Assembly (NCBI GenBank): GCA_002269645.1
Contig: NIVC01001489.1
Location: forward strand, 124,001-188,000
Length of the DNA stretch: 64,000 nucleotides
Direction: 5' to 3'
DNA from: Macrostomum lignano
Lineage: Eukaryota
Shown: positions 27,508 through 61,564 of the stretch, piece after piece
Position numbering within the stretch: position 1 is the first letter of the stretch
Layout of the letters: every line of letters starts with the position of its first letter
Program-made: the position numbers and the translations under genes
Notes under the pieces: model-generated
Databases searched by the model: none
What the model saw: only the letters and a program-made list of their open reading frames with translations
What the model was told of the DNA's origin: nothing

Positions 27508-33452
<5,945 letters not shown>

Positions 33453-34233: not shown

Positions 34234-35338
34234 CAGAGCCTCTAACGAGTTTTCCAAAATCAAATCTATGAAGTAAAAATCGCTAAGAGAGATGCGTCTC
34301 CATAAATCAATCTGAAACTTAATGCAAGCAGGGATTAATTACAGTATGTTTATGTAATGCCGTCGCTTCCGACTCTTTGATGACTACTGCTGCTGCCTAC
34401 TAACTCTCCCTCTGGCTGTCCTTAACAACTTGCACGGCAGGTAGCTGGCCTGAGTGGTTTAGCACTATGGTCAGAGAACCCTCGCTTAGTCTCTATCAGG
34501 TTACAATTAGATATTAAACCGAGTTGGTAGTTGGGTTGCTGCCACCTTGTAGGTCTACAGGTAATATCCTTGACAGGCTATCCCTAGGTAGGCCTACTGT
34601 AAGTAGAAAATAAAAAAAGACAAGGCAAGTCAGTTAAACGTTTATTAATGTGAGTAACGGTCACAGGCCGATCCTAAATTATCGTTTAATTGCTCAGCTG
34701 GTGTCGCAGTAACCAGCCCTAAGCCTTATTAGGTGTCAATTTGATGTTGCCCCACAGCGTAGGTTGTAGGCCTTGAGACCGGGTCCAGACGGTGTTGAAG
34801 GTCTGGCGTGCTGTCGACACAATAGCCTGCGGCAGTCTTAATGAGCAATGGCAGCTGCTAGGTTATCCCTAGGAAAAGCGTCTAGCGAATCTGCCTAAGC
34901 TAGTCCGTCTAGGAAAAGCATCTAGGAATACTAGCTCTTGCTCGAAGCCAAGCAGGCGGTCTCCGAACGGATGGTCTCTTTTAGGCCCTCACCTACTCCG
35001 TATTTATACTAAAATCTGGGGCGGGCTCAGGGCCAATAGAAAGCTCAGAGTCAGTTCCGTGGCAGATCTCGAGGCAGTTCCGTGGACTACCCGGAGCCAG
35101 AAACGATCTCGGAGGTGTCCATAAGACATCTGCCTCATCACGAGTCCTCCGCATGGCCTACTGGTACACTGCTTACATGTTGCAGCATGCAAGGAGTGTA
35201 ACCAAGACCCCACGAGAGCCTACCCCGGGCGGAGAGCTATGCTCTCGTTCCCGCAGACTAACAGAGACTGTACTAAGGGAGAAATATCCCACTGACTAAC
35301 ATTCTATTTTTAGCCTATTGCAGCCTGCGCCAGGGCTC

Positions 35339-38949
<3,611 letters not shown>

Positions 38950-39048
38950 TGGCACTGAAGAAGATCAGCTGCATTCTTGTTCTAGCAAAGAACTACTTAA
39001 CAGTAGGAATACCAAGCCATTTTTCCGCCCGTCGAACTGCCAAGAGGG

Positions 39049-41049
39049 GGGGGGGAAATTTCCCCCCCCTGACAATTTTTTTGCTGCGCCGGAACGGAGC
39101 AACGCAACAAAATTCAAGAACACGGGCTAACTTTTTGTTGCGCGCCAGTGTATTCAGTACACCCCTGTGCGCCAAATAGCACTGCGCCTCAGTGCAGCCT
39201 TGCCAAGTCTCCAAATTTCATCAGCACGTCGACCAAATGTGTCTGCATCAGTTCTGACTTCGTTGGTTACTGGCCTTCACCGAGACGGAGCTTCTAGACC
39301 TTCAACAGGTGGCAACAGGTGACTATGAACACCTTGATGCGAATTTCTCTAGTTTCACCGATCAAGCCTTGACAGTAGGCAAGCCTCAACTGCCAGACAC
39401 CCTCAGCTAGTCTCCTGAGCATTCCTTCATCATCCCGACACCGTCGGCACCTTCAACAGGTGGCATCAGGTTACTATGGACGTCCTGTTGCAAATATGTC
39501 AGGTCTTTCTTACCAAGCTTCAATAATGGGCAAACCTCAACCGACGGACATTGTCAGCTAGTCTCTCAAGCATTCCGTCATCATCCCGATGACGTCGGCA
39601 CCTTCAACAAATGACACCAGATGACTATGGACAACCTGATGCTGATTTCTCTAGTTTCGCCGATCAAGCCTCGACAGTGGGCAAAAATCAACTGCTGGAA
39701 ATTCTCAGCTAGTCTCTCAAGCCTTCCGTCATCATCCCGACGCCGTCGGCTCCTTCAACAGATTACACCAGGGGACTATGGACAGCCTGATAAGAATTTC
39801 TCTAGTTTCGCCGATCAAGCCTCGATAGTGGGCAAAAATCAACTGCTGGACATCCTCAGCTAGTCAGTCAAGCATTCAGCCATCACCCCGACGCCGTCGG
39901 CACCTTCAACAGGTGGCACCAGGGGAGTAAGGACACCTGAGCGTGATTTTTCATCATGCTCTTAACATTTCTGAATCATTAAAAAATGAAAAAACGGATT
40001 GAATTTACTGGCTTCTGTAGGGCGTAGGCCGTGCGCTGCACTCTCTGCCCCACATTATTATTCATGACTCATTCTCTCGCCTAAACTTGTTTACCAATTC
40101 TCGACCAATCGCGCATCGCTGCACCCCACCCCACAATATTGACTAATAAATATATTGAGTAAACAGAGCCATACAGAGGCCACCTTTTCGGCACGCAAAC
40201 CCTGACTTCACAGCTTCTTAGAAGCATAACCCTTTCTGCATAAAAATTCGGTTCAATATTATAGTTGAATAAACTAAACAGCTTTTCGAATAAAATATGT
40301 ATGTAGCTCGTATGCATAAAAGTATGTGTAATAATAATATAAATATACAGCAACATGAGTTCAAGCTTAACTATAGCAATGTCCGTGCTTTAAAAATTTT
40401 GAGAGCTTCAGAAATGTTAAGAGCATGATGAAAAATCACGCTCAGGTGTCCTTACTCCCCTGGTGCCACCTGTTGAAGGTGCCGACGGCGTCGGGGTGAT
40501 GGCTGAATGCTTGACTGACTAGCTGAGGATGTCCAGCAGTTGAGGTTTGCTCATTATTGAAGCTTGATAAAAAAAACCTGACATATTTGCAACAGGCTGT
40601 CCATAGTCACCTGGTGTAATCTGTTGAAGGAGCCGATGGCGTCGGGATGATGACGGAAGGCTTGAGAGACTAGCTGAGAATGTCCAGCAGTTGATTTTTG
40701 CCCACTGTCGAGGCTTGATCGGCGAAACTAGAGAAATTCGCATCAGGGTGTCCATAGTCACTTGGTGTCATCTGTTGAAGGAGCCGACGGCGTCGGGATG
40801 ATGACGGAATGCTCGAGAGACTAGCTGACAATGTCCGTCGGTTGAGGTTTGCCCATTATTGAAGCTTGGTAAGAAAGACCTGACATAGTTGCAACAGGAC
40901 GTCCATAGTCACCTGATGCCACCTGTTGAAGGTACCGACGGTGTCGGGATGATGAAGGAATGCTCAGGAGACTAGCTGGGGGTGTCTGGCAGTTGAGGCT
41001 TGCCTACTGTCGAGGCTTGATCGGTGAAACTAGAGAAATTCGCATCAAG
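39049..41049. mobile_element. Foldback-like element: arms of tandem 151-bp subrepeats around a ~430-bp spacer
   Basis: 39333-39974 is the reverse complement of 40407-41049. CCTTCAACA recurs at 39299, 39450, 39601, 39752 and 39903. The right arm lacks the terminal segment. Confidence 0.75.
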
Positions 41050-41485
41050 AAAAGAAAAATGATAAACATATTGTAAATAATCCTTGCTTGCATTACGCTC
41101 GAAGCTGTACATCATCAACTTGTCGAAACGGCTTTCTTGGTAAAGAGAATTGTTGCAACATCATGATTAAAATCTGAATACCTTCAAAAGATTATGTTTA
41201 GTATTCGCCGAAAACATACTCTTGAATCTTCAATTCAGGAATAAATGAGATGTAATATTCGAGGGCAAAAGACAGCCAAAATTTCTTTCATGTTTTACAT
41301 CCTGCGAAAAATGAATTGAATGGAATCTGAAATAGAAAAATTAAATATCGATGAGCACTTTTAGTCACGAATTTGCTGATTAGAGTTTTTTGGAAGCTTA
41401 CTTGAAGTAGTTAGCTCAATGTTCATAGCAATAAATTAAAAACTGTAATATCAATTAAATGATAGAGTTCCAACGGCTTGAGAGT

Positions 41486-41878: not shown

Positions 41879-44800
41879 TGCCCAGGACTTTGACGGCGGC
41901 AAAACCCTCGGTTTAGCCTGGCTAAGGGCTACCTGCAATAAGTTAATCTCGTGCGGATTGGTTGATGTGAGTACAGGCTCGTAACCGTTGCTTTCTTCTT
42001 ACCTGGTTGAGAGTTACAAACCAATTCACTGAAGACAAGTTTGCATGAACCCGGAGGAGATCTCCACCGCTCTGGTTCTGACCCACGAGATCGGGCACAA
42101 CCTCGGCTTCGAGCACATGCAGGACTTCACTGCGTGCCAGTGCAATCGGTCGTCAACTGGCTGCATAATGAACTCTTATCTCGCGTCCGAAACGCGGTGA
42201 GTGTGGAAATTTAACAGTTTACAGAAATTTGAACAGCTGTGAGCTGGTATCGGTTTTACAATCGATTTCCCATGCTCCACTGCTGCACGGAAGCTCTGGG
42301 CTGGTCATCCTGCACCTTGGACACCTGGAGCTCGCAAGCCAGCGAGACAGACCGACACAAACAGACACAGACAGACACAGACAGACACACAGAGACACAG
42401 ACAGACACAGACAGACACACAGAGACACAGACAGACACAGACAGACACACAGAGACACAAACAGACACAGACAGACACAGACAGACACACAGAGACACAG
42501 ACAGACACAGACGCAGGCAGACACAGGCAGACACAGACAGACACAGACAGACACACAGACAGTGAATGCTTCACGAGGCTGAACGTCGAAAGCGAGTTCT
42601 TAAAATATTTTTTTACATCAATGAACTGGTTCTGATTTCGTAATTTCTATAACTGAATCTGTTTTCTCACTGTGAGGCGCACGCCAGGTAGGAAAAGGTT
42701 GGCGTAGTTGAATCCGAGACTGATAAGTTCGTAAGCCGCATGTGGCAGTGGCCGTAGAGGTACTCGCTTCTGACGTTTAGCCTGGTGAAGCATTCGCTGT
42801 CTGCGCTTCTGGCTGCGGAAGAGAACAGCCGCTGGCACTGGGCGGTTGAGGACCTGCACTGTCCTTTGTAGCAGAAGGCCTGGAGAACAGCGAGCGGTCG
42901 GAAAAGGTTAGTATAATGTTGTAGGCCCAATTTAAATTCTCGCGTCACTATGGAAACATAACTCGGAAAATAATTTTTGTTTAAATGAATCTGGTCCCCC
43001 ACCCCAATCTTATTATAAATACACGGGAGTTTTGCGCCCAGAGAGGGAACCGAGTTCCGACCGAGACTTTTCAGTTATATCTTTGGTTCATAGGCGAATT
43101 GCCTATAAAATTGAAGAAGTGTTCCAAGCCTTCCTTCATTTGCTAGAAAAGCTAAGAGCGAATGCTCATTGGACAGAAAGTAGAAATTACCAAGAGCAAG
43201 AGACGAATAGTCTAAAAGCCAATTGCGTACTTGCAAAGAGCAGAGGCGTAGCCAGCCAATAGAAAGGGGAGATATATCCCAATAGAAATATTCGAACTGA
43301 ACAACCAATGGGAAGTCGTATATGACAAGAGCAAATCCGTAAGAGGAAATTGAAACTCACCGGGCAACCTCGATCCATTGGAGGACGCTGCTTTAGGACT
43401 TAGTCATCCCCCCTCTCTCCCTAGCTAAACAGTGTCTTGCCGCTCGGGCACTGCGCGCTACCAGGGCAATCCGTGCTTACGTGAAAGCCCATAATCTTAA
43501 CTCCGTGACACCGTATTTTAATAGTCCACAACGAACCTAATAGCTAAATTTATGAAATTCTAGAATTATAGCAAATTTTATCCTAATACAACATGGTGAT
43601 TGCGGTAAAATTTAGAGAATAATAATGGTCCCCTACAACAACTTGGTGACAGCTGTAGAATTGTGAATAGGCAGAGGAATTCCCCTACAACAACTTGGTG
43701 GCACAGCGAGATAAAATACAATAATAGTAAAGAGGCCTACAACAATAATGCTTTTGTTACTAGTACGTACCTCACTTTTGAAGGTGATGTGAGTTACAAA
43801 ATTATTAATGTAAAAAAATATTACATCAATAGAAATTACGAAATCAGGACCAGTTTATTTAATGTAAAAAAATATTTTTAGTATGGAGCTTTTAGTAAGT
43901 CAGTTGGCTTACTAAGAGAGTATTTATCTTCAAATTAATTTTCGAGTACAGAAGATCTATTATGAGAACTAAAATAGGGTTCTTTGCTGCGCAGGAACGG
44001 AACAAAGCAGGCACAGGAAATTCAAGAACATGGGATCATATTTTGTTGCGCATTTCGACCACATGTTTCGGCATCAGCTCCGACTTCGCTGGTCACTGAC
44101 CTTCACCCAGGCGGAGCTTCTGGACCTTCAACAGATGGTACCAGGTGACTATGGATACCCTGTTGCGAAATAACTTTAAAAAATGGCAACCTCAACTGCT
44201 GGACATCCTCAGCCAGTCTCTCAAGTACGAGTAGTCTGTAGTCATCCAGACGCCGTTGGCTTCTTTAAAGGGTGACAAAAAAGTGATCAAGGACGCCAAA
44301 TTTCATTTCTGAAGCTCGTAAAACTTAATTCTGCGCATAAAGGTGGCTTTAATTAAGTTTAACCTTTCATTACTGTATTTTAATATTATAAATTCTTTTA
44401 AAGATATTGCTACTCACTGGCTATAAATATTTTATTTGGTAACTTTTTTAGTTTATGAAAGTATAAACTGAAATGCCTTTATGCAGAAATGGCCTTGCCT
44501 TTAGAGATTAACAAAATATTGAATTCAGTGCCCCACAAACGAAACCTCAGAAAACGTAAAAACTGCTAATACAATCAAAATCAAAATAAAATTAGTGCGA
44601 AGGTATGACAGCTGCTACTGTACACTCGACAGAAGCTATTACTTACATGTGGACGAAATTGTTTCTGATCGTAATAAATTCTTTCTCGATTTCATGTGCC
44701 GCCTGCGTATCAACTTTTTAAAATCTGCTCAGGTGTCCATAGTCCCCCGATGCCACCCGATGAAGGTGTCGACGGCGTCGAGGTAATAACGGAATGCTTG

Positions 44801-46144: not shown

Positions 46145-48534
46145 GCGAGTAGTTCTGGAATTGAAATCAATATTTCACTGAACACAATGCAAATCTGACA
46201 GTTAGAATCGAATATTTAAGCAGATTTAAATGCCATTTATATTTTTGTACCGGATTATTTAAAAAACAATTTTTGCAACTGGCCGGAAATTTTGCTGGAG
46301 GCTTTCGTTGCAAAATGCATTGGTGAGACAAAAAAATTTCAGTTTTTAGGACTAAATTTCCAATGTGTCACCCTCTGGACTTCCCCTAGCAGAAGCGTCT
46401 TTGTGCTTCAGTTGTCTATGCTGCTCTACTGCATACCGAATTGCAGACAGATTAAATATGCAGAGCCTCTAACGAGTTTTCCAAAAACAAATCGATGAAG
46501 TAAAACTGGGTATGCGACAGTGTGGTTCGTAGAAGGCATGTATCATATAGCTCGTATCGTATTTCCTTATTTCGCACGCATACCGTACTACTTGTAATCC
46601 TTCATTCATTTCAACAATATTCTATACGTATTAATATTGCGCTTATGTTACTTTTGTATCTGTAGTTATTGGTCGCCTCGCATGTATTTATTCTATTATT
46701 TTTATTTCATGCATATCGTGTTACTTCTCGTAAAGTAGTTCCTATTTATGTACATGTATTTAGTTTACAGTATTCTAGCACGAGTTTGTACAGTTCGCTT
46801 GGGGGGTTTGCCTGATTAGGCCTGTTTATCAATTGTTATCATGTTTACATGTACATTATACTCGTAAATATACGCTTGCAGTCAGCGGCCGCTTTCTCAC
46901 TTCTTCTCTGCTCGCGGGTCCTTAGCCGTCTGGCTTTTCCTCGCCCTCACAAGTTTACCCTTCCGCCGCCTACTTCGGCCCACCAATCAGCAGGGTCTCG
47001 ACCGGCCTTCGCAAGGCGCAACCAGAGCTCATTGGATTAAAGCCCATTAAAGTACCCACTTACAATTACGCTAGTGTGAATTCGGCTGCTGAGCTGGATC
47101 GTAGACTTAATCAAATTAGTTAATAAATTAACCGCTACACCAGAAAAGTCTTCCGCCGTAATCGTCACAGCTAAGAGGGACGCGTCTCGATAAATCAATC
47201 TGAAACTTTTAGGAAGCGATGACAAAAATATTAATGATGTTGAGACCTGACAAAGAATAACGAAATTGTAACAAACAGCATGTAATTTATTTGATCGCGG
47301 ATCGCGGACATTCGAGGAATAATTTATTGGTCCTCAAGATAAAGCCAATAATCCCAATTGTAATTGACTTAAGGGAACGCGAAATAGTTAGATCTTGGTG
47401 CTTATAGCAGTGTTTTTTTAGCAATTGTTTAGCAATTTGACGATCATTATTCGCATTTTTTATGCAGAACAATACATTACTACAAACAATGCATTGTTTT
47501 TAGGACCGTCAAACAAAAAAAAAGGAAAGAATCAGCGGTCGCAGCACGTGACAACGATTAGTCTATGGCTCGCGCTTACCGGCGCTCGCCAGACAATCGT
47601 TGTCACGCACTGGGACCGCTGATTATTTATCCATGGTTGCTCGAGGGTTGCTGTAATAATTATTAAATGTAATTTTGAGTGACTGCTTTATTCTACTTAC
47701 CTTGTACTTACTCTCTCTCTCTCTCTCTCTCTCTCGGAAAAAATGAGTTAGTTTGCTATGTCATGGTGACCCATATTATAACGTCCATGACTGGCAAGAA
47801 TTTTAAGCACATTTTTTCGAAACTGGCTTATAAAATGTGTAAATATCTGCTTATATTATCAATCAAAACCTGCTTTGACAATAAGACACTAGTCACAGAG
47901 ATAGACTATAAATAGATGCCCTGACACCAGGGCACTCTAGTCACAAAAATAGGAATTCAAAATGTAGACAATCAATAGAATGTTGTAGGATTTTGCTTTG
48001 CTACTTACTGATGGAACTAGTAAGTAGAATGCCAGGACCTGTGCGTCAATAAATTTAGTTTCGGGTCCCTGCAGCGCGTCCTCCGCGCCCTATTTTGGGA
48101 AACACTGACTGGGTGCTAATGGATATTAAATATTGGCTAGGATGATTCCCTCGGTAAATACATACAGTGTAGTTTCTCATATTTGATCGGCTAAAACTGA
48201 TGAGAGGGACTCCAGGCCAGGTACTGCGAGATTTTCTCGATATACTGACTGTTTGGCAAGGCAATTAATCACGCAGAGGCAACGTTTCTGCTTGCGGGCG
48301 GCTCCCGTGCAAACAAAGCCGCTTAAGCTAACAGCTAATTGTGTGGCTTCTCTGAACTCCTCGGCTGGCCAATTATTGCATTGGACAGCTGGTTGTCGGC
48401 TGGTAGATGCGGCATCCTGCATTTATTGACAGGCGGCAATGCAGATAAAAGTGAGAAAAGTGAATTTTGCGAATTCGGCCTGAGCCCATAATCTAAGGCA
48501 GCTCTGATCGCACGCAGCCCAGTCTGCAAGCAAA

Positions 48535-50970
48535 ATGTCAAAGAATCAAGTGGCAGCCTGTTTCCACGTTAAGGCGGACTCTGGGATGCTAGGCGAAGCG
48601 CCTCATCAGCCAGCGGCGTCAGTTGAGGAGATTCTCTCCAGCTTCATCAAGTACGCCAGCCACAGCGGCATGCTGCCCGGCATGCAGAGGCAGGGTGCCA
48701 AGCGCACCGTGTTGACCGCTCTGGCAGTGCTGGCCAATGTCTTGATCTATGCCGAGTGTCTGGCTACCATGGTGATGTTCTTGCGCCTGCCAACGGCCCT
48801 GGATGCAAGCACAACTTTGCTGGTTGTGTCCATCATCTTTCACTCCTACTGTGCCTCGATCAGCTCTCTGTTCATGTGGTCCAGCTGCTCGGGAAGGCTG
48901 AGCAGCTTTCTGCTCGATGTGGACGCAATACTGGCTGATTCGAGAGCCGTGCCCCAGCTGGAGGCGGCACTGCGACAGCGGTTCTTTCAGTACAAGGGTC
49001 TGCTCAGGAAGTTCTTTGCAGCGTTTTTCACTGCCGTAGTGATCAACTCGATCATGAGCGTGACCCTCATCATCATGGCTCCGAACCAGGTTCCTTTCAT
49101 GTTCAACATCCGCATTGCGATGTTCGGCTCTGCAGGGACCGGCCCCCTGCCAGCAATCCACCAGGCTCCCTGGGCGCAGGTGGCCAGCCAGGTTGCCGCT
49201 TCGGTCTGGTGGATCTACAAGTCACTCCTGTGGAACTTCGGCTTTCTGCTCTTCTTCACCTTAATTTGCATCCCTACCCACCTGCTGCTGGGCTACAGTT
49301 CGGGGCTTGCGGCCCAAGTTCGAGAATCCCAGGGACTCACGGGAGACGCAGCCGCGGCCTATCGACTTTTCTATTTGAGGATCGCGGGCGCAGTTGAGTC
49401 CGCTGACGTCATAGTGCGCCTGTACCTGTGCGCCACCTTCCTGTTCTGCATCATGACCGTGATGTTCAACGTCAACGCCTTGATAGACTTGAGCCAGGTG
49501 GATCAGATGGTGACCTCCATCCTGGCCGTTTGGATCGGGTCCGGCCTTGTGCTGCTTTGCCTGCCAGTCTTCATGTGCGGCAGAGTTTCGGTTCTGGTGA
49601 GGACGCAAAACTTTTAGCTGCAAATATTGTAGCTTACCGAGCTTCTTTTTGGCCAGGATTTATTTAGATCAAGGTCGTTTTAGCTGGTTTTAACAGTAGG
49701 AATTCTACTCCTGACAAATTTTTGCTACGCCAGAACGGAGCAAGACATTCACATGAAATTAGAGGACGCAAGCTAACGTTTTGTTGCGCACACCTTCTCA
49801 GGATTCTCAGGACTCTGGACTTTTAACAGGTGGCATTGGTGACTGTGGAAACCTGTTGCGACTGCGTACGATTCTTCATATCAAGCCTGGTCAGTAGGCA
49901 AGCCTCAAGTACTGGAAATTCTCAACTAGTCTCTCAGTCATCATCCTAACCCACTTTCTGCAGATGGCACCTGGTTGACTGTGGACTGACAATTAATAGC
50001 TAATCCTGTCCTTGAATTTCGTACAGCACTGGAAACGTATTTTGATTGGTTGCATAAGAGAAGTCAAGTGACACAGAGCAGGACAATCACGCTTTACTAG
50101 GGCTATGAGACTCAAGATGGCGATGCAAAATTTCTAATATGAGGATTGTCCAACGCGTCTTGCGCTATCGCCAGGTTTCATACACCGTGCATGCAGTCAG
50201 CAAGAGTTTTACTGTCCAGTGCACTTAAACAGATTCGTTTTTAATTTTCAGGTCAAGAAGCCTTTAGACGTTCTGCAGCGGCAGGAGATCACGAAAAATA
50301 ACTTTAAAGAGGTAAAAAGTAATCAGCATTAACTACGAGTATACTCAGCAACATTGAAAAGTCGCCACTCTATGCGCCAGTGAGCAATTTCCCTTAGATT
50401 TCTCTTAGACTATTCTGCAATAAAAGATACGAGAAAATTGATCGGAGTAGCTTTAATCCGTCCAACCTTCGCCCACCGCTCACTCCACCACTTCATTTCT
50501 CAACTCAAGTCTGCCGCGGCGTAGCTGAGTTGCGTCACTCGCAAAGATTAAGAGGCTTTACCTACACTTTCAAAAGTGGCGACTGAACAGACAGAATCTT
50601 ATGCGATGGCAACTTTTCGATGTGGCTGGGTATATTAAGCTTTTTCGAGCATTCTTGTGCATCTCAACATTGAATTGAAATCTCAGCTTCTAGTGCTTCT
50701 AGAGGTGGTGAACAGCAGCAGCTGCGGCATCACCTGCGCCGGCCTCTTCACCATTGACTATTCGCTGATTCCAAGTGTGAGTAGCATCAGCCTCATGCCG
50801 CTTCTCTCACTCCGAAATTGAGTTAAACTTGATCTAAGAGCGCATTATTGAAATTTCAGCTCACCGGACTGCTGCTGACTTACTTCATTCTAATTGTGCA
50901 GACCCAGCAAGGCGCCAACAGCTCCGGCTACCCCAGCGGGGGAGGCACTTCAAACGGCTCAGCGCTCTGA
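48535..50970 (+). CDS. Gustatory receptor-like (GRL, 7tm_7 / insect chemoreceptor superfamily) 7TM ion-channel subunit, ~440 aa
   Basis: Exons 48535-49596 (six hydrophobic helices), 50252-50311, 50687-50776 (LLVLLEVVNSSSCGITCAGLFTIDYSLIPS) and 50860-50970 (LTGLLLTYFILIVQT). Three phase-0 introns near the 3' end, a TY-hhhhh-Q motif, and AATAAA at 51040-51045. Confidence 0.8.
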
Positions 50971-51526: not shown

Positions 51527-51683
51527 ACTCCTGTGGAACTTCGAGTTTCTGTTCTTCTTCACCTTAATTTGCATCCCTACCCACCTGTTGCTGGGCGACT
51601 GGGTTCGCGGCCCAAGTTCGAGAATCTCAGGGTCTCACGGGGGACGCAGCCGCGACTTATCGATTTTTCTATTTACAGATCGC
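51527..51683 (+). pseudogene. Duplicated, frameshifted fragment of GRL exon 1
   Basis: Matches 49224-49385 (LLWNF.FL.FFTLICIPTHLLLG) with indels. Confidence 0.8.
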
Positions 51684-53059: not shown

Positions 53060-56000
53060 ATGGCAGGTAAGTTCCGCTCTCACTGCCTGAGTTTCCACCG
53101 GGTACGCACGAAGCTGTACGGCATTCAATCCGCAAATTTCAGGTGCACTGCTGCTCACTCTCTCCATCCTGGCTGCTGGAGCTGCAGCAGACACTGAGTA
53201 CACGCACGTGTGGGACTCCGCTGACATGGCGCTGGGCTGCAAGCCATGGCTGTCTGTGCAGGTGAAGACAGGAGACCTCACCGAGTTGCACAACATTACC
53301 TTCACTTTGTCCACCAGGTGAGAATTTGGTTTGACTTTGTCATAGCCTTCGTAACATGGGCTGCTTTTTCACGCCAACCCTGAAGTATGACGGATATACG
53401 GTAGAGGACTAGAGGATCACCGGTAGAGGACTTGAGGATCACCGGTAGAGGACTAGAGGATCAACGAACTCTCTACATCCCCCAACCGTACCAACATCAA
53501 CAGGATCCTATAAACAGTATTTTAAGGATGCTTAAAGTCCATTCCACGCTGCCCCTGTGACAGTAGCTAAAAGTTCACAAACTACTTGAAAACTTGTCCG
53601 CAGCGCCGTCTTCAACAAGCGAGTCCGAGTCCGCACAAGCGATCGGCACTTCAAGCACAAGCACAGAGCGCCCTGTCTGTACCAAGGAAGAGTTGGCAAC
53701 ACGGACGAAAAGGCTTATGCCAGCGAGCTCGGAGACCGACTAAAGTGAGTCAATTTCTAGCTCTGAGATGCAGCTATTCTCCAGCTTAATAACCTTGACC
53801 CTTGACCTCCGCCGTAGAATGACCTTCAAGCTGAACGGCAGCTGGTACCAAGCCGAGACGTCCTCCGGCAGTTCCGCGGACGCTCCGGCAATCGCGAAGC
53901 AGTTCGAAGTCCGCGAAGACGAGACCGCCAGCCAGTGCCGCTACAAAGTTCCGCCCAGAAACTTCAGCGAGATGAACGCGCAAGGCGCCAGCGCCATTCC
54001 GTCGAGTGTCGCCTTCGTTCTGGAAAAGGGCGCGCTGAACGTCGAAAGCTTTCAGGGTGCCATCGTGGACAAGATCTTGGAGCTGGTCATCGTTGTGGAT
54101 CGAAGCTTTGTAAGAATTCGCAGGTGCTTCCATGCTGCTTGAAAGCTGAGCTCCTTACTCACCGCCATTCCCTGCGGTCACTTCCAGATCAGCAAAGCCG
54201 GCAGCGAGTCGGGCGCTGTGACCAGAGTCATGCAAATCTTCAATTTCGTGAATGGGGTGAGCAGAATTCTGTGAATTTTCCGCTAATGAGATATCGATTT
54301 GCAGTTCTTCCTTGCCCGTTGCAGCTGTACCAACCACTCAGACTGAGAGTTGTGCTCACTGAGATTGTCATCTGGCGAACGGACAAAATTTCGATCAGCT
54401 CAAGCGGCGGGGAAACCTTTCAACAGTTTACGTTCTACAAGGCCTTTCAAATGAAAGGAATTAAGCATGACTCGGTTATGCTACTCAGGTGACGAGACCT
54501 CATCGTTTCTGCTGATTGGTTTTACAGTGCTTCGATGAATTCATTTCAACATCGGATAGCTAATTTTGTGCCCACGTGTCACTTCATTTACTGTTTACCC
54601 CCAAAATTTTCCAGCGCTACAAACTGGGACGGAAACAAAACTCTTGGCGTAGCCTGGATCAGGTCCACCTGCTTCACTGCGCACTCGTGCGGAATAGTTA
54701 GTGTGAGCACTTCGAATGCTTTTCTATTCTCCGGATAGCTGCAACAGACAGGTGAAGATTTTTTGCTTGCCGCATCGCCAACACCTGCAGGACAGATACT
54801 CAGAGGAGATTTCCACCGCGCTGGTTCTGACGCATGAGGTCGGTCACAACCTGGGATTCCTGCACACGAAAGACTACAGAAGCTGTGTCTGCAATCGGTC
54901 TTCAACCGGCTGCATCATGAACTCGTTCCTGGACCCCAAAACTCGGTGAGAGCTGAGCTGGCTACAACCACACCGCACTCGATCCCACACACCAGTGAGA
55001 GCTGAGCTGGCTACAACCGCACCGCACTCGATCCCACACACTAGTGAGAGCTGAGCTGGCTACAACCGCACCGCACTCGATCCCACACACTAGTGAGAGC
55101 TGAGCTGGCTACAACCGCACCGCACTCGATCCCACACACTAGTGAGAGCTGAGCTGGCTACAACCACACCGCACTCGATCTCACACTAGTGAGAGCTGCT
55201 CTGGCTACAACCGCACCGCACTCGATCCCACACACTAGTGAGAGCTGCTCTGGCTACAACCGCACCGCATTCGATCTCACACTAGTGAGAGCTGCTCTGG
55301 CTACAAAAGCACCGCACTCGATCTCACACTAGTGAGAGCTGCTCTGGCTACAACCACACCGCACTCGATCCCACACACTAGTGAGAGCTGAGCTGGCTAA
55401 ACCACAATTCACTCGATCCCACACACTAGTGAGAGCAGAGCTGGCTACAACCACAATGCACTCGAACCCACACACTAGTGAGAGCTGAGCTGGCTACAAC
55501 CGCACCGCACTCGATCCCACACACTAGTGAGAGCTGAGCTGGCTACAACCACAATGCACTCGAACCCACACACTAGTGAGAGCTGAGCTGGCTACAACCG
55601 CACCGCACTCGATCCCACACACTAGTGAGAGCTGAGCTGGCTACAACCGCACCGCACTCGATCCCACACACTAGTGAGAGCTGAGCTGGCTGAACCACAA
55701 TGCACTCGATCCCACACACTAGTGAGAGCTGCTCTGGCTACAACCACACCGCACTCGATCCCACACACTAGTGAGAGCTGAGCTGGCTAAACCACAATGC
55801 ACTCGATCCCACACACTAGTGAGAGCTCAGCTGGCTGAACCACAATGCACTCGATCCCACACACTAGTGAGAGCTGCTCTGGCTACAAAAGCACCGCACT
55901 CGATCTCACACTAGTGAGAGCTGCTCTGGCTACAACCGCACCGCACTCGAACCCACACCAAGCGGTTCAAATTCGCCCTCCTCCCTCCCGCAGCACGGAA

Positions 56001-57219
56001 GCCCTGGGCTGGTCTTCCTGCTCCTTGAAGGCCTGGGGCTTGCAGGCCAACGAGACCTGGAGGAGCTGCCTGGCGGACGCACCGGATGAGTCCTACACCA
56101 CCAACCGGAGCATCTCAGCATGCGGCAACGGCATCTTGGAGCACGGCGAACAGTGCGACTGCGGGCCATCTCAGGCGAGACGTCCGTGGCATTTCACAGA
56201 GACATTGATGCGTGCAAGGTGTGCAAGAGACTCCGGATAGCAAATTACATCAGAGCGAGAGCAAGCATATCATTAGCATACATGTGAATGCAATAATAAA
56301 GTTCTTACTTGCTTATCAAAGCAACTAGAGCATAAAAATACTATTGCCGTGCAATTGCTATCTTTACACCAGTAATTTATCAACCCCAATGCTTCATCTT
56401 GAACCTGCTGATAGCAACAAATACAGCAACCGAAAGCATCTTATTTGAGCACAGTTCTTACAATGGGTCTCAATGAGCCTCTCAAACTCTGCCATACAGC
56501 TTGCATTCTCAGGCTTCCATTGTCCGATGCCTGGCCTGCTTTACGAGTACTCAATAATTAGCGATTGAGCAGCTCTCTGAGCAGCTCTGGGTCAGTCCTG
56601 CCATTATCACCTGAACCGTGCGCTCTTCTGACAACTGATGCAGAAGATAGTCCTAACGAGAAGACACTCTGTCTGACACTGCTCCGACTACGAGCGTATT
56701 TTCTTTTGTTTTATATTAACAGCAGATCGAGTGGGTAGAGATTGAGAGAGTGAGTCATAGACCGAGAAGGCTACTCCCCACTTCGAGAGACAATAGTAGT
56801 ACTATGCAGATATGACATGCCATGCTATGCAGACGTGCTCGTCAAAGTGCTGCGACGCGAAGACGTGCCGGCTCAAGGCCGGTGCCACCTGCGCCTCGGG
56901 AGCCTGCTGCGACTGGGACACCTGCACGCTGAGGCCGAGGGGCCGCGTCTGCAGAGCCGCCGACGGACCGTGCGACGTGCCGGAGACCTGCAGCGGGTCT
57001 GGCGAGTGGTGCCCCAGCGACGACAAAGTGGCCGACGGAGTGGACTGCGCTGCCGGTCAGGTGAGAGACGCTGCTGAAGACAGGTGTCTGGTGTTATGGT
57101 TTTTTACCTTGTAGCTTAAGCGCCTTTGATTTTGTGCCTGTCTGAGCTATGAGCTACATATTTAAAGTTCATACTCGCTTCTCGAATAGTAAGTTCATCT
57201 GTAGTTATGTCTGTCTGTC

Positions 57220-57269
<50 letters not shown>

Positions 57270-57277
57270 CGCCTGCC

Positions 57278-57322
<45 letters not shown>

Positions 57323-57361
57323 GTCTGTAGTAGTGTCGGTCTGTCTGTCTGTCTGTCTGCC

Positions 57362-57414
<53 letters not shown>

Positions 57415-57421
57415 GCCTGCC

Positions 57422-57480
<59 letters not shown>

Positions 57481-60400
57481 GTGTCAAGATATTTTTTACA
57501 GAATTAGTGAGAACATCTGCTCAGCATTTGCATCCTCATCACTTCAGGCCTTCTGCTACAAGGGACGCTGCAGATCGCCAGACACCCAGTGCCGAAGGCT
57601 TTTTGATTCTTCAGCCAAGAGCGCCGACAAGAAGTGCTTTGAAATCCTGAACAAAAACAGCAGCGCCTACGGCCACTGCCATTCACGACTGGCTGTGCTC
57701 TTCATCTCGGCCAGGTTCAGACTGTCGGGAATTTTCTCCTACGTGCCGTGCGCTCCAAAGTGAGTGAATGGAGCTGTTTGACTAATGGCTATTGCAAGTA
57801 GGAAAGGCACAGGTATTTAAATATTCACAAATTTTACAGGGACGTTGAGTGCGGCCTGCAGCAGTGCGAGCTGGTTGCTAAGCCTCGGTTTGGGAACAAT
57901 AAGACGGTCGGAAATACCACCTGCTACTCGTTCCCCCACATCGATTTGTCTTCATCCGGAATGCGCAGCCCCTCTCTGGTGCCGGACGGAGCCAAGTGCG
58001 GAGTTGACTCGGTGAGATGGGCAGGCCAGCTATGGCTGGAGTTGGGTAGCAGTTGAGGTGAAGACCTGCCGATTTTGAAAATTGCAGATGTGCGTCAACT
58101 CCACCTGCACACCGCTGAGCACCGTCCGAGCCTGCAAGTCGTGCCCTGACTGCAAAGCCAACGGGGTGCTCACTTCTGGCAAAGTCTGCTTTTGCAAAGC
58201 CGGGTTCGAGCCGCCAAACTGCTCCAAGGTGGGCTGCGGCGGCTCCGTGACGTCACCGCTGACGTGTCCCGGTGAGTACCGGGGATCCTCTGGCCTTCTA
58301 CCGGTGATCCTCTAGTCCTCTACCGGGGATCCTCTACTCTTGTACCGGGGATCCTCTAGTCTTGTACCGGGGATCCTCTAGTCCTCTACCGGTGATTCTC
58401 TAGTCCTCTACCGGTGATCCTCTGGTCTTCTACTGGTGATCTCTAGTCTTCTACTGGTGATCTCTAGTCTTCTACTGGTGATCCTCTAGTCTTCTAGTGG
58501 TGATCCTCCAGTCTTTTACCGGGGATCCTCTACTCTTGTACCGGGGATCCTCTAGTCTTGTACCGGGGATCCTCTAGTCTTGTACTGGGGATCCTCTAGT
58601 CTTGTACCGGTGTTCCTAAAGGCACTAACCCCAGCAGCTTTTGTACTGTAAGAGGTCTTGTTAGACAGCACGGAGGCTACTGCATGCAGTATTAAATATT
58701 GTTGAACTGAATCTTTATTGTTATAACTTTCAGTGAAAAATAGTACGACAACAACGTATGAACCCACGAGCAAGTCGACGAGCGAGCCGACGTCTCCAGA
58801 GTCTGTCAGCTCTACAAGCGCACCGGAAGCTGCTGAAACTACAGCTACAAGTGATTCAACACACTACACAAGTGAGAAGACATCTCCAGAGTCTGTTAGC
58901 TCTACAAGCGCACCGGAAGCTGCTGAAACTACGAGTACAGTTACAAGTGACTCAAACCGCTACACAAGCGAGCCGACATCTCCAGAGTCTGTCAGCTCTA
59001 CAAGCGATCCTCTACCGCTACACACAACCCGCTACACAAGGGAGCCGACGTCTCTAGAGTCTGTTGGCTCTACAAGCGCACCGGTAGCTCCTGAAACTAC
59101 GAGTACAGTTACAAGTGACTCAACCCGCTACACAAGGGAGCCGACGTCTCTAGAGTCTGTCGGCTCTTCAAGCGCACCGAAAGCTCATGAAACCACAACT
59201 ACAAGTGAGCCAACCCGCTACACAAGCGAGCCGACATCTCCAGAGTCTGTTAGCTCTACAAGCGCAGCGAAAGCTCCTAAAACTACAACTATAAGTGAGT
59301 CAACCCGCTACACAAGCGAGCCGACATCTCCAGAGTCTGTTAGCTCTACAAGCGCAGCGAAAGCTCCTAAAACTACAACTATAAGTGAGTCAACCCGCTA
59401 CACAAGCGAGCCGAGGTCTTCAGAGTCTGTCAGCTCTACAAGCGCAGCGAAAGCTCCTGAAACTACAACTACAAGTGAGCCAACCCGCTACACAAGCGAG
59501 CCGACATCTCCAGAGTCTGTCAGCTTTACAAGCGCACCGAAAGCTCATGAAACCACAACTACAAGTGAGCCAACCCGCTACACAAGCGAGCCGACATCTC
59601 CAGAGTCTGTTAGCTCTACAAGCGCAGCGAAAGCTCCTGAAACTACAACTACAAGTGAGCCAACCCGCTACACAAGCGAGCCGACATCTCCAGAGTCTGT
59701 CAGCTCTACAAGCGCAGCGAAAGCTCCTAAAACTACAACTACAAGTGAGTCAACCCGCTACACAAGCGAGCCGACGTCTCCAGAGTCTGTCAGCTCTACA
59801 CGCGCGCCGGAAGCTGCTGAAACTACAACTACAAGTGAGTCAACTCACTACACAAGGGAGCCGACGTCTCTAGAGTCTGTTAGCTCTACACGCGCACCGG
59901 AAGCTGCTGAAACTACGAGTACAGTTACAAGTGACTCAAACCGCTACACAAGCAAGCCGTGGTCTTCAGAGTCTGTCAGCTCTACACGCGCAGCGAAAGC
60001 TCCTGAAACTACAACTACAAGTGAGCCAACCCGCTACACAAGCGAGCCGACATCTCCAGAGTCTGTCAGCTCTACAAGCGCAGCGAAAGCTCCTGAAACT
60101 ACAACTACAAGTGAGGCAACCCGCTACACAAGCGAGCCGACATCTCCAGAGTCTGTCAGCTCTACAAGCGCAGCGAAAGCTCCTGAAACTACAACTACAA
60201 GTGAGCCAACCCGCTACACAAGCGAGCCGACATCTCCAGAGTCTGTCAGCTCTACAAGCGCAGCGAAAGCTCCTGAAACTACAACTACAAGTAAGCCAAC
60301 CCGCTACACAAGCGAGCCGACATCTCCAGAGTCTGTCAGCTCTACAAGCGCAGCGAAAGCTCCTGAAACTACAACTACAAGTGAGCCAACCCGCTACACA

Positions 60401-61564
60401 AGCGAGCCGACATCTCCAGAGTCTGTCAGCTCTACACGCGCAGCGAAAGCTCCTGAAACTACAACTACAAGTGAGCCAACCCGCTACACAAGGGAGCCGA
60501 CGTCTTCAGAGTCTGTCAGCTCTTCAAGCGCACCGAAAGCTCATGAAACCACAGCTACAAGTGAGCCAACCCGCTACACAAGCGAGCCGACATCTCCAGA
60601 GTCTGTAAGCTCTACAGGCGCACCGGAAGCTCCTGAAACTACAGCTACAAGTGACTTAACCCTCTACACAAGTGATAACCACTACAAAAGCGAGCCGAGG
60701 TCTTCAGAGTCTGTCAGCTCTACAAGCGCAGCGAAAGCTTATGAAACTACAACTACAAGTGAGCCAACCCGCTACACAAGCGAGCCGACATCTCCAGAGT
60801 CTGTCAGCTCTACAAGCACAGCGAAAGCTCCTAAAACTACAACTACAAGTGAGTCAACCCGCTACACAAGCGAGCCGACGTCTCCAGAGTCTGTCAGCTC
60901 TACACGCGCGCCGGAAGCTGCTGAAACTACAACTACAAGTGAGTCAACTCACTACACAAGGGAGCCGACGTCTCTAGAGTCTGTTAGCTCTACACGCGCA
61001 CCGGAAGCTGCTGAAACTACGAGTACAGTTACAAGTGACTCAAACCGCTACACAAGCAAGCCGAGGTCTTCAGAGTCTGTCAGCTCTACACGCGCAGCGA
61101 AAGCTCCTGAAACTACAACTACAAGTGAGTCAACCCGCTACACAAGCGAGCCGACATCTCCAGAGTCTGTCAGCTTTACAAGCGCAGCGAAAGCTCCTGA
61201 AACTACAACTACAAGTGAGTCAACCCGCTACACATGCGAGCCGACGTCTTCAGAGTCTGTCGGCTCTACAAGCGCACCGAAAGCTCATGAAACTACGAGT
61301 ACAGTTACAAATGACTCAACCCGCTACACAAGGGAGCCGAGGTCTTCAGAGTCTGTCAGCTCTACACAGGCACCGGAAGCTCCTGAAACTACGAGTACAG
61401 CTACAAGTGATTCAACCCACTACACAAGCGAGCCGCCATCTCCAGAGTCTGAGAGCAGTGTGAATCCTGATGAAGAAGTCGCTTTGAAGAGCTCCGAGTG
61501 CTTGCTGGCTTTTGAGTTTGCATGCTTTCTTGGAGTCGTCGTGTCGCTTGGATCCATCATCTAA
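53060..61564 (+). CDS. ADAM-type metalloprotease, copy E: divergent paralogue with a ~900-aa S/T/P/E mucin stalk and a C-terminal hydrophobic (GPI-like) end, ~1630 aa
   Basis: Exons 53060-53066, 53143-53317, 53604-53744 (CLYQG), 53818-54109, 54188-54256, 54325-54488, 54615-54702, 54791-54945 ([11 protein letters not shown] at 54833-54865, CIMN), 55994-56174 (GC donor), 56833-57060, 57548-57759, 57840-58011, 58088-58271, 58734-61564 (...[25 protein letters not shown]). Confidence 0.86.
53398..53463 (-). repeat. 22-bp minisatellite (3 copies) in intron 2 of copy E
   Basis: Reverse complement of the TACCGGTGATCCTCTAGTCCTC unit in intron 13. Confidence 0.8.
54946..55955. repeat. 49-bp minisatellite (~20 copies) filling intron 8 of copy E
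   Basis: Unit GTGAGAGCTGAGCTGGCTACAACCGCACCGCACTCGATCCCACACACTA; the first unit starts at the splice donor. Confidence 0.92.
57207..57483. repeat. (TCTG)n microsatellite in intron 10 of copy E
   Basis: About 65-70 tetramer units, in the same intron position as in copy C. Confidence 0.93.
58277..58611 (+). repeat. 22-bp minisatellite (~15 copies) in intron 13 of copy E
   Basis: TACCGG(G/T)GATCCTCTAGTC(C/T)T(C/G) units. Confidence 0.9.
58734..61450 (+). repeat. Coding 90-bp (30-aa) tandem repeat forming the mucin stalk of copy E
   Basis: Consensus [30 protein letters not shown], roughly 28-30 units including 32-aa variants; no stop in 2.8 kb. Confidence 0.9.

What the first reader, a model, noticed from the sequence alone, without database searches (positions are those of the whole stretch)
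48535..50970. Intact gustatory-receptor-like 7TM ion-channel gene embedded in the protease array
The ORF track shows only a 360-aa hydrophobic ORF. Three further small exons joined by phase-0 introns add ITCAGLFTIDYSLIPS-LTGLLLTYFILIVQT. Established: the GR/OR/GRL superfamily is marked by a TM7 TYhhhhhQF motif and conserved 3' phase-0 introns, and its non-insect members are poorly characterised. Here the terminal Phe is Thr, at a position near the channel gate in insect GR/OR structures. Adjacency to surface proteases may be incidental, or may reflect a shared sensory/epidermal expression domain (inference).
Basis: partly seen in the sequence, partly recalled or inferred. Interest (0 to 1): 0.72.

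Follow-up and report, generated by a model that had tools for sequence, protein, structure and literature searches.

The report
Gustatory-receptor-like ion channel gene, four exons
The region holds a complete four-exon gene for a gustatory-receptor-like seven-helix channel protein of the insect taste and smell receptor family: a real gene, but an ordinary new member of a known family, and its one odd pore residue also occurs in two relatives.

Summary
The 360-aa ORF (48535-49617) is there.

- Pfam 7tm_7 matches only the spliced protein (E=3.9e-5, just under the curated cut-off). The ORF alone gets no hit.
- A flatworm protein (Macrostomum lignano, named 'Gustatory receptor' in UniRef) aligns without gaps at 41% identity across all three junctions.
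- Five spiralian GRL genes have their three 3' phase-0 introns at the same positions, and all share the same 90-nt penultimate exon.
- An AlphaFold model (pLDDT 70.7) matches only insect GR/OR/Orco structures in the PDB.
- A profile of the protein plus its relatives hits Orco, Gr43a, MhOR5 and BmGr9 over full length.

The TM7 motif is TYFILIVQT. The final Thr replaces the Phe that plugs the outer pore in BmGr9. The same Thr occurs in the M. lignano and a Biomphalaria relative, so it is a lineage variant rather than a lesion.

The gene lies between tandem ADAM-like genes on the same strand, and nothing shows it is nested in one. Expression, ligand and channel activity are untested.

Verdict: new member of a known family, modest interest.

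The parts
48505..48507 (+). In-frame TGA 30 nt upstream of the start codon, which bounds the N-terminus within this exon
48535..49596 (+). Exon 1 (aa 1-354): start ATG, putative re-entrant TM0 region (about aa 37-50), TM1-TM6. Donor is CTG|gtgagg.
   Evidence: Relatives-only HMM E=2.6e-22.
49597..50251 (+). Intron 1 (655 nt, phase 0). It contains pieces of an interspersed repeat also found at about 32.1, 39.1-41.0 and 44.0 kb.
   Evidence: Same position as the intron 3 residues before the conserved 'PL' in the Lottia, Lineus, Solemya and Biomphalaria genes.
50252..50311 (+). Exon 2 (aa 355-374, VKKPLDVLQRQEITKNNFKE), the cytoplasmic stretch after TM6
   Evidence: 12/20 identical to M. lignano P0013 with no gap. 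The homologous exon is 69-72 nt in other spiralians.
50312..50686 (+). Intron 2 (375 nt, phase 0)
   Evidence: same position in all five relatives mapped
50687..50776 (+). Exon 3 (aa 375-404): TM7a and the linker, with the GLFTID motif. It is 90 nt, exactly as in all five relatives.
   Evidence: E=1.5e-6
50777..50859 (+). Intron 3 (83 nt, phase 0), just before the TM7b exon
   Evidence: IDxxxxxx|xxGxxxTY in all six genes
50860..50970 (+). Exon 4 (aa 405-440 plus stop): pore helix TM7b and an extracellular tail with two N-x-S sequons (N424, N436)
   Evidence: E=5.9e-6
50878..50904 (+). Codons for the TM7 signature T411-Y-F-I-L415-I-V-Q418-T419. Thr419 (50902-50904) stands where GRs have the outer-gate Phe.
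   Evidence: Profile alignment to Orco ...TYFMVLVQL and Gr43a ...TYLVILIQF. Residue roles from PMC11100771.
51040..51045 (+). AATAAA, 70 nt after the stop codon: a candidate polyadenylation signal
   Evidence: consensus match only
51527..51683 (+). Dead 157-nt copy of part of exon 1 (49224-49385; TM4 and the following loop): 86% identical, 5-nt deletion, sharp edges, no other exons

Best explanation
A single-copy, four-exon gene (48535-50970, + strand) encodes a 440-aa gustatory-receptor-like (GRL) protein of the insect GR/OR '7TM ion channel' superfamily, in the spiralian branch of that family. By analogy with solved insect GR/OR structures it probably forms a tetramer, alone or with other subunits. 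The N-terminus would be inside the cell and the C-terminus outside. Helices 1-6 would form a ligand pocket, and the last helix (TM7b, in exon 4) would line a central cation pore. In that pore, S404 and T411 would give hydroxyl rings, L415 the inner hydrophobic gate and Q418 the glutamine that swings in on opening. T419 replaces the Phe that plugs the outer mouth in BmGr9, so the closed gate would rest on L415 alone and the mouth would be more polar. Shown here: gene structure, family membership, fold and predicted topology. Inferred: tetramer, channel activity and the effect of the Thr. Unknown: ligand, tissue, and whether the gene is transcribed.
For: - Gene model: canonical GT-AG borders, three phase-0 introns, open 1323-nt CDS, seven hydrophobic peaks.
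- Pfam 7tm_7: E=3.9e-5 over residues 179-420 against profile positions 141-367 of 370. The unspliced 360-aa ORF gets no 7tm_7 hit at all.
- HMMER against 1.84 billion representatives: 12 hits. The 10 looked up are 9 spiralian proteins (M. lignano, Solemya x2, Owenia, Biomphalaria, Lineus x2, Patella, Lottia) and one nematode protein (Plectus), several of them named 'Gustatory receptor' by their sources. All 12 rows of alignment A2 (the window protein plus 11 relatives) match 7tm_7, best E=1.7e-20.
- Closest relative: M. lignano P0013 aligns to residues 262-440 with no gap at 41% identity across all three junctions, and itself scores 46.8 bits on 7tm_7.
- Introns: positions and phases are identical to those mapped in the Biomphalaria, Lottia, Owenia, Lineus and Solemya genes, and the penultimate exon is 90 nt in all six.
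- Structure: an AF2 model built with the 12-sequence alignment has pLDDT 70.7 and pTM 0.68, long TM4 (212-264) and TM5 (270-317), and a split TM7 (372-384 and 401-425).
- Foldseek against the PDB: ranks 1-24 are only insect Gr64a, Gr43a, BmGr9, Orco, OR and MhOR5 chains (E down to 2.3e-8, target TM-score up to 0.73). The next hit has E=0.29.
- Profile of A2 against PDB sequences: Orco 1.8e-14, Gr43a 1.6e-9, MhOR5 3.2e-9, BmGr9 1.3e-5, all near full length and ending on the TY.....Q(F/L) motif.
- Topology: K+R count is 22 in the predicted inside loops and 3 outside.
- Residue roles come from the BmGr9 structure paper (PMC11100771) and Benton et al. 2020 (PMC7746228).
Against: - The Pfam score (23.6 bits) is below the curated cut-off (26.6).
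- No transcript, junction read or protein evidence could be obtained, so 'expressed and functional' is not shown.
- The source organism could not be identified, and neither the ORF nor the spliced product is on record in the protein collection.
- The fourth motif position departs from the published (F/L/M) set.
- The AF2 model is of moderate confidence only. Residues 1-51, 191-207 and 426-440 are below pLDDT 50.
- The profile-based PDB hits rest partly on the relatives in the alignment.
Confidence: 0.85

Rival explanations
1. The gene is a young, still-open pseudogene or a silent copy. The sequence looks intact, but it is no longer transcribed or under selection.
For: A dead 157-nt copy of part of exon 1 lies 2.3 kb downstream, so this locus has undergone duplication and decay. 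The surroundings are repeat-rich and rearranged. No expression evidence was obtainable.
Against: All 440 codons are open. All six splice sites are canonical. Exon lengths and phases are conserved against relatives that diverged long ago. The conserved motif residues G388, F395, T411, Y412 and Q418 are all retained. AATAAA follows the stop codon.
Confidence: 0.1
2. The gene is real but the model is incomplete. It may have a further 5' coding exon, an alternative start (M18, M46 or M50), or alternative 3' exons.
For: Residues 1-51 are modelled with low confidence, and N-termini of relatives align poorly. A possible acceptor (cag) lies between the upstream stop and the ATG.
Against: An in-frame TGA lies 30 nt upstream of the ATG. 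The segment that aligns with the conserved N-terminal 'G' region of relatives and of Orco (profile positions 16-30) is already inside exon 1. The 3' end is colinear with M. lignano P0013 up to the tail.
Confidence: 0.1
3. It is a G-protein-coupled 7TM receptor or another unrelated multi-pass membrane protein, and the GR resemblance is compositional.
For: It has seven hydrophobic segments. The Pfam score is below the gathering threshold.
Against: The first GPCR in the Foldseek list is at rank 39 with E=0.7 and TM-score 0.13. The charge distribution predicts an N-in topology, the opposite of GPCRs. Intron positions, the TM7 motif and full-length profile hits all point to GR/OR.
Confidence: 0.01

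Closest known systems
Macrostomum lignano 'Gustatory receptor' fragment (UniRef A0A1I8J294; P0013, 180 aa)
   Same: 41% identity to residues 262-440 with no gap across all three exon junctions. Same 20-residue KKPL...KE segment, same IDYSL motif, and the same Thr-ending TM7 motif (TYFVLIIQT). The two group together in 200 of 200 NJ bootstraps.
   Different: At 41% identity it is a paralogue, or comes from a different species. The M. lignano entry is a C-terminal fragment. Its tail carries a CNC motif that the window protein lacks.
Spiralian GRLs (Lottia V4C6X0, Biomphalaria XP_013093436, Solemya KAL5017309, Owenia A0A8J1TS15, Lineus XP_064619349)
   Same: Same Pfam family. Three 3' phase-0 introns at identical positions and a 90-nt penultimate exon. 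Shared G..GLF.ID...TY.....Q pattern and an N-glycosylation sequon in the extracellular tail. Biomphalaria P0006 also ends its motif in Thr (TYGIIVIQT).
   Different: Only 16-29% identity. The exon homologous to exon 2 is 69-72 nt there and 60 nt here. Most end the motif in Phe. Some have an extra upstream intron.
Insect gustatory receptors with solved structures (BmGr9, DmGr43a, DmGr64a)
   Same: Predicted fold (Foldseek E down to 2.3e-8). Motif residues T, Y and Q and the middle hydrophobic gate residue, in the same register as BmGr9 436-TYLVILIQF-444. Split TM7 and long TM4-TM5.
   Different: About 12-16% identity. The outer-gate Phe (BmGr9 F444) is Thr here. The ligand pocket is not comparable and no ligand is known.
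Orco / MhOR5 odorant receptor channels
   Same: Best sequence-profile hits (Orco E=1.8e-14, full length) and the highest TM-scores (0.69-0.73).
   Different: In Orco the motif ends in Leu (the L473 gate). Orco has a much longer TM4-TM5 cytoplasmic loop. ORs are an insect-specific offshoot of GRs.
Non-insect GRLs with known biology (C. elegans LITE-1/GUR-3 and EGL-47; Nematostella NvecGrl1), as summarised in PMC7746228
   Same: Same superfamily. They show that non-insect members need not be taste receptors (light or H2O2 sensing, egg-laying control, body patterning).
   Different: Not compared by sequence here. Only the nematode Plectus relative was recovered.

Membership tests
GR/GRL family (Pfam 7tm_7, PF08395) | Match to the family HMM at or above the curated gathering score | tested here: inconclusive
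   E=3.9e-5 and 23.6 bits against a cut-off of 26.6, covering profile positions 141-367 of 370. The closest relative P0013 passes at 46.8 bits, and all 12 members of alignment A2 match at E<=0.001.
GR/GRL family | TM7 signature (T/S)Yhhhhh(Q/K/E)(F/L/M) (Robertson 2015, as quoted in PMC7746228): first three conserved positions | tested here: met
   T411, Y412 and Q418, with five hydrophobic residues between them (FILIV).
GR/GRL family | TM7 signature: terminal F/L/M | tested here: not met
   The residue is Thr419. The same Thr occurs in M. lignano P0013 and Biomphalaria P0006. PMC7746228 calls the motif 'diagnostic, but not definitive'.
GR/GRL family | [quoted passage not shown] 2003, as quoted in PMC9998090) | tested here: met
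   Window junctions coincide in position and phase with those mapped exactly in five spiralian GRL genes.
7TM ion channel (7TMIC) superfamily | [quoted passage not shown] | tested here: met
   Seven hydropathy peaks. K+R count 22 inside against 3 outside, with N-x-S sequons in the C-terminal tail. This is a prediction, not an experiment.
7TM ion channel (7TMIC) superfamily | Fold: long TM4-TM6 forming an anchor domain and a split TM7a/TM7b (criteria listed in bioRxiv 10.1101/2023.08.30.555482) | tested here: met
   AF2 helices 212-264, 270-317, 324-355, 372-384 and 401-425. The top 24 Foldseek PDB hits are exclusively insect GR/OR/Orco chains.
7TM ion channel (7TMIC) superfamily | Shorter extracellular than intracellular loops | tested here: inconclusive
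   EL1 is 11 aa and EL3 14 aa, against IL1 47, IL2 36 and IL3 51. EL2 is about 50 aa by hydropathy and partly low-confidence in the model.
7TM ion channel (7TMIC) superfamily | Tetrameric ligand-gated cation channel activity | not testable with these tools
   Needs expression and electrophysiology, or a multimer model or structure.
G-protein-coupled receptors | GPCR fold and extracellular N-terminus | tested here: not met
   Best GPCR Foldseek hit has E=0.7 and TM-score 0.13. The charge bias predicts an N-in topology. There is no GPCR Pfam hit.

The most novel reading that the evidence does not exclude
The window gene, the M. lignano gene and one Biomphalaria gene may mark an old spiralian GRL subfamily in which the outer hydrophobic pore plug (Phe) was replaced by Thr and then kept. 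Such channels would have a single-layer gate and altered resting conductance, selectivity or agonist sensitivity. They might serve a non-taste role in epidermal or secretory cells alongside the neighbouring surface ADAM-mucin genes.
Probability: 0.15. Interest if true: 0.45.

Novelty: new member of a known kind. Interest (0 to 1): 0.3.

Why it matters
It adds a cleanly resolved, full-length GRL gene model from a lineage whose nearest relative is a flatworm. The reviews read here list GRLs for Annelida, Nematoda and Mollusca among protostomes but do not name Platyhelminthes (PMC7746228), and four literature searches found no paper on flatworm GRLs.

It also shows a practical point for annotation. 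The long ORF alone is invisible to Pfam, and the family becomes recognisable only once three exons of 60 to 111 nt are joined, so ORF-based or weak gene callers will miss such genes.

The recurring Thr at the outer-gate position offers a natural variant for testing the role of the QF gate pair described in insect GR structures. None of this changes what is known about the family.

Tried and rejected
- Single-sequence AlphaFold gave an unusable model (pLDDT 44.6). It was replaced by the alignment-based run.
- The word-indexed homologue search found nothing with the single protein. With alignments it returned only proteins already in the query, probably because hydrophobic words saturate the candidate list. 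The exhaustive HMMER search was needed.
- phmmer of the single protein against PDB sequences found nothing. The profile search did.
- Looking up the source contig failed. The organism therefore stays unidentified. A macrostomid or other flatworm is a guess from the nearest relative only.
- I tested whether the GRL gene is nested in an ADAM intron by searching for the ADAM TM/cytoplasmic-tail exon downstream of it. No credible match was found between 46 and 64 kb, so nesting is unsupported but not excluded.
- No second GRL gene was found in the window, only the 157-nt fragment.
- An NJ tree asked whether the Thr variants form one clade. Window plus M. lignano is solid (200/200), but adding Biomphalaria gets only 107/200, which is inconclusive.
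- Literature searches for flatworm GRLs returned nothing specific.

Full report
**1. What is in the sequence**

The + strand carries a 360-aa ORF at 48535-49617. It starts at the first ATG after an in-frame TGA at 48505-48507.

| Exon | Coordinates | Length (nt) |
|---|---|---|
| 1 | 48535-49596 | 1062 |
| 2 | 50252-50311 | 60 |
| 3 | 50687-50776 | 90 |
| 4 | 50860-50970 | 111 |

The borders read CTG|gtgagg..ttttcag|GTC, GAG|gtaaaa..tctcag|CTT and AGT|gtgagt..atttcag|CTC. Every exon length is a multiple of three, so all three introns are phase 0.

The joined CDS is 1323 nt and encodes 440 aa without a stop. The protein has seven hydropathy peaks, near residues 59-77, 95-113, 163-181, 235-253, 292-310, 329-347 and 399-417. 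An AATAAA lies 70 nt after the stop codon.

**2. Is the exon model more than chance?**

Three independent lines say yes.

- *Relatives-only profile.* An HMM built only from relatives, with no window sequence, was run against all 2043 six-frame pieces of the window. It finds only the exon 1 ORF (E=2.6e-22), the exon 3 piece (1.5e-6) and the exon 4 piece (5.9e-6), at colinear profile positions. The result holds when the closest relative is also left out.
- *Closest relative.* This is a Macrostomum lignano protein that UniRef names 'Gustatory receptor' (P0013). It aligns to residues 262-440 without a single gap at 41% identity, through all three junctions. Exon 2 matches at 12 of 20 residues.
- *Pfam.* The unspliced ORF gets no 7tm_7 hit at all. 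The spliced protein matches 7tm_7 with E=3.9e-5.

**3. Family membership**

*Sequence searches.*
- The Pfam hit covers residues 179-420 against profile positions 141-367 of 370. At 23.6 bits it is 3 bits under the gathering score.
- The exhaustive HMMER search of 1.84 billion representatives returned 12 proteins.
- The 10 looked up are GRLs from nine spiralian sources (M. lignano, Solemya x2, Owenia, Biomphalaria, Lineus x2, Patella, Lottia) and one nematode (Plectus).
- All 12 rows of alignment A2 (the window protein plus 11 relatives) hit 7tm_7, best E=1.7e-20, and eight also hit Trehalose_recp.

[quoted passage not shown] I mapped the exact exon structure of five relatives on their genomic loci. 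The window gene's introns sit as follows:

| Intron | Position in the protein | Found in | Window gene |
|---|---|---|---|
| A | 3 residues before the conserved PL | 4 of 5 | L\|VKKPL |
| B | 21 residues before the F of LFxID | 5 of 5 | same position |
| C | 8 residues after ID, just before xxGxxxTY | 5 of 5 | same position |

All are phase 0. The exon between B and C is exactly 90 nt in all six genes.

*Topology.* Lys plus Arg number 22 in the predicted cytoplasmic segments and 3 in the external ones. The external C-terminal tail carries two N-x-S sequons.

**4. Fold**

With the 12-sequence alignment, AlphaFold gave pLDDT 70.7 and pTM 0.68. The model shows:
- long helices 212-264 (TM4) and 270-317 (TM5);
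- helix 324-355 (TM6);
- a short helix 372-384 (TM7a), separated from 401-425 (TM7b).

This is the split TM7 and anchor-domain layout listed as 7TMIC criteria in bioRxiv 10.1101/2023.08.30.555482.

Foldseek against the PDB put only insect Gr64a, Gr43a, BmGr9, Orco, AaegOR10, AgamOR28, ApisOR5 and MhOR5 chains in ranks 1-24. E-values run from 2.3e-8 to 4e-2, and target-normalised TM-scores reach 0.73. The next hit has E=0.29 and TM-score 0.13.

A profile of the alignment also hits PDB sequences over nearly full length:

| Target | E-value |
|---|---|
| Orco | 1.8e-14 |
| Gr43a | 1.6e-9 |
| MhOR5 | 3.2e-9 |
| BmGr9 | 1.3e-5 |

In these alignments the motif lines up as GlllTYfiiivQf against Orco GAVVTYFMVLVQL and Gr43a SAIATYLVILIQF.

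**5. The Thr**

The motif here is 411-TYFILIVQT-419. The BmGr9 structure paper (PMC11100771) assigns these roles in BmGr9 (436-TYLVILIQF-444):

| BmGr9 residue | Role | Window residue |
|---|---|---|
| T429 (7 residues upstream of T436) | further hydroxyl ring | S404 |
| T436 | hydroxyl ring in the pore | T411 |
| Y437 | contacts pore lipids | Y412 |
| I440 | inner hydrophobic gate | L415 |
| Q443 | swings into the pore on opening | Q418 |
| F444 | outer hydrophobic plug (equivalent to Orco L473 and MhOr5 V468) | T419 |

In that paper's account, F444A raised the EC50 and lowered currents, while I440A/Q raised resting currents.

So every functional position is conserved in kind except the outer plug. 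By inference, the channel would keep its main gate but have a polar mouth.

The Thr is not private to this gene. M. lignano P0013 has TYFVLIIQT and Biomphalaria P0006 has TYGIIVIQT, while the other nine relatives have Phe. A rough NJ tree on 126 ungapped columns joins the window protein and M. lignano in 200 of 200 bootstraps. Adding Biomphalaria gets 107 of 200, so a single origin of the Thr is possible but not shown.

**6. Surroundings**

The window is eukaryotic and repeat-rich. It holds tandem ADAM-like genes on the + strand:

| Unit | Approximate span |
|---|---|
| Copy 0 | ..572-3855 |
| Copy 1 | 11650-22736 |
| Copy 2 | 28317 to about 34300 |
| Rearranged partial unit | 42742 to about 47200 |
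| Copy 3 | 53819 to beyond 61564 |

- These units carry Reprolysin and ADAM_CR domains by Pfam, the CGNGILE..CDCGP disintegrin motif and Thr-rich mucin-like stretches. Copies 0 and 1 also have a TM segment plus a Pro-rich tail.
- An LTR retrotransposon (RT, RNase H, integrase) sits inside copy 1.
- The GRL gene lies between the partial unit and copy 3 on the same strand, so 'embedded in the protease array' is correct as a matter of position.
- I found no ADAM tail exon downstream of it. Nothing therefore shows that it is nested in an ADAM transcription unit, and nothing bears on co-expression.
- Intron 1 contains pieces of a repeat family that is also present at 32, 39-41 and 44 kb.
- A 157-nt copy of part of exon 1 lies 2.3 kb downstream, at 51527-51683. 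It is 86% identical, has a 5-nt deletion and has sharp edges, so it is a dead fragment.

**7. What remains open**

- No RNA evidence was available.
- The source organism could not be identified. The nearest relative suggests a flatworm, but this is a guess.
- Ligand, partners, tissue and channel properties are unknown.
- Non-insect GRLs have varied roles, including light or H2O2 sensing, egg-laying control and body patterning (PMC7746228). 'Gustatory' is therefore a family name here, not a function.

**8. Verdict**

This is a well-formed new member of the known GRL/7TMIC family, carrying a gate-position variant that it shares with at least two relatives. It has modest interest for specialists, mainly as a clean gene model from a poorly sampled lineage and as a natural variant of the QF gate.

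Noticed in passing
window 572-3855, 11650-22736, 28317-~34300, 42742-~47200, 53819-61564+: Tandem array of ADAM-like genes on the + strand, with propeptide, Reprolysin, disintegrin CGNGILE..CDCGP and ADAM_CR parts plus long Thr- or Ser/Thr-rich mucin-like stretches. Copies 0 and 1 also have a TM segment and a Pro-rich tail. One unit (42.7-47.2 kb) is partial, with its ADAM_CR piece on the minus strand.
   Followed up: partly
window 14765-17811: LTR-retrotransposon coding region (gag-like ORF, RVT_1, RNase H, integrase zinc-binding domain by Pfam), split over several frames and lying inside ADAM copy 1.
   Followed up: partly
window 35331-36287 and 38001-38957: Perfect 957-nt inverted repeat (100% complementary, extended by 117 nt at 97%) around a spacer of about 1.5-1.7 kb. 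It could be a foldback element or an assembly artefact.
   Followed up: no
window 39298-41050; also 32113-32532, 43983-44223, 49710-49990: Inverted arrays of units about 150 nt long (653-nt arms, 94% complementary). Pieces of the same repeat family lie in intron 1 of the GRL gene and elsewhere in the ADAM array.
   Followed up: no
window 51527-51683: 157-nt dead copy of the TM4 and loop part of GRL exon 1 (86% identity, 5-nt deletion), with sharp edges and no other exons nearby.
   Followed up: yes
window 54831-55958 and 57164-57543: A 49-nt tandem repeat array and an 8-nt (CTGTCTGT-type) microsatellite inside ADAM copy 3. Similar GACA/CAGA-type runs at 30838-31225 and 42219-42582 produce long spurious ORFs.
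   Followed up: no
locus L005 (Solemya velum) and protein P0002: Solemya has two adjacent GRL genes (locus tags 006898 and 006899). The 647-aa product P0002 looks like two GRL units fused in one gene model.
   Followed up: no
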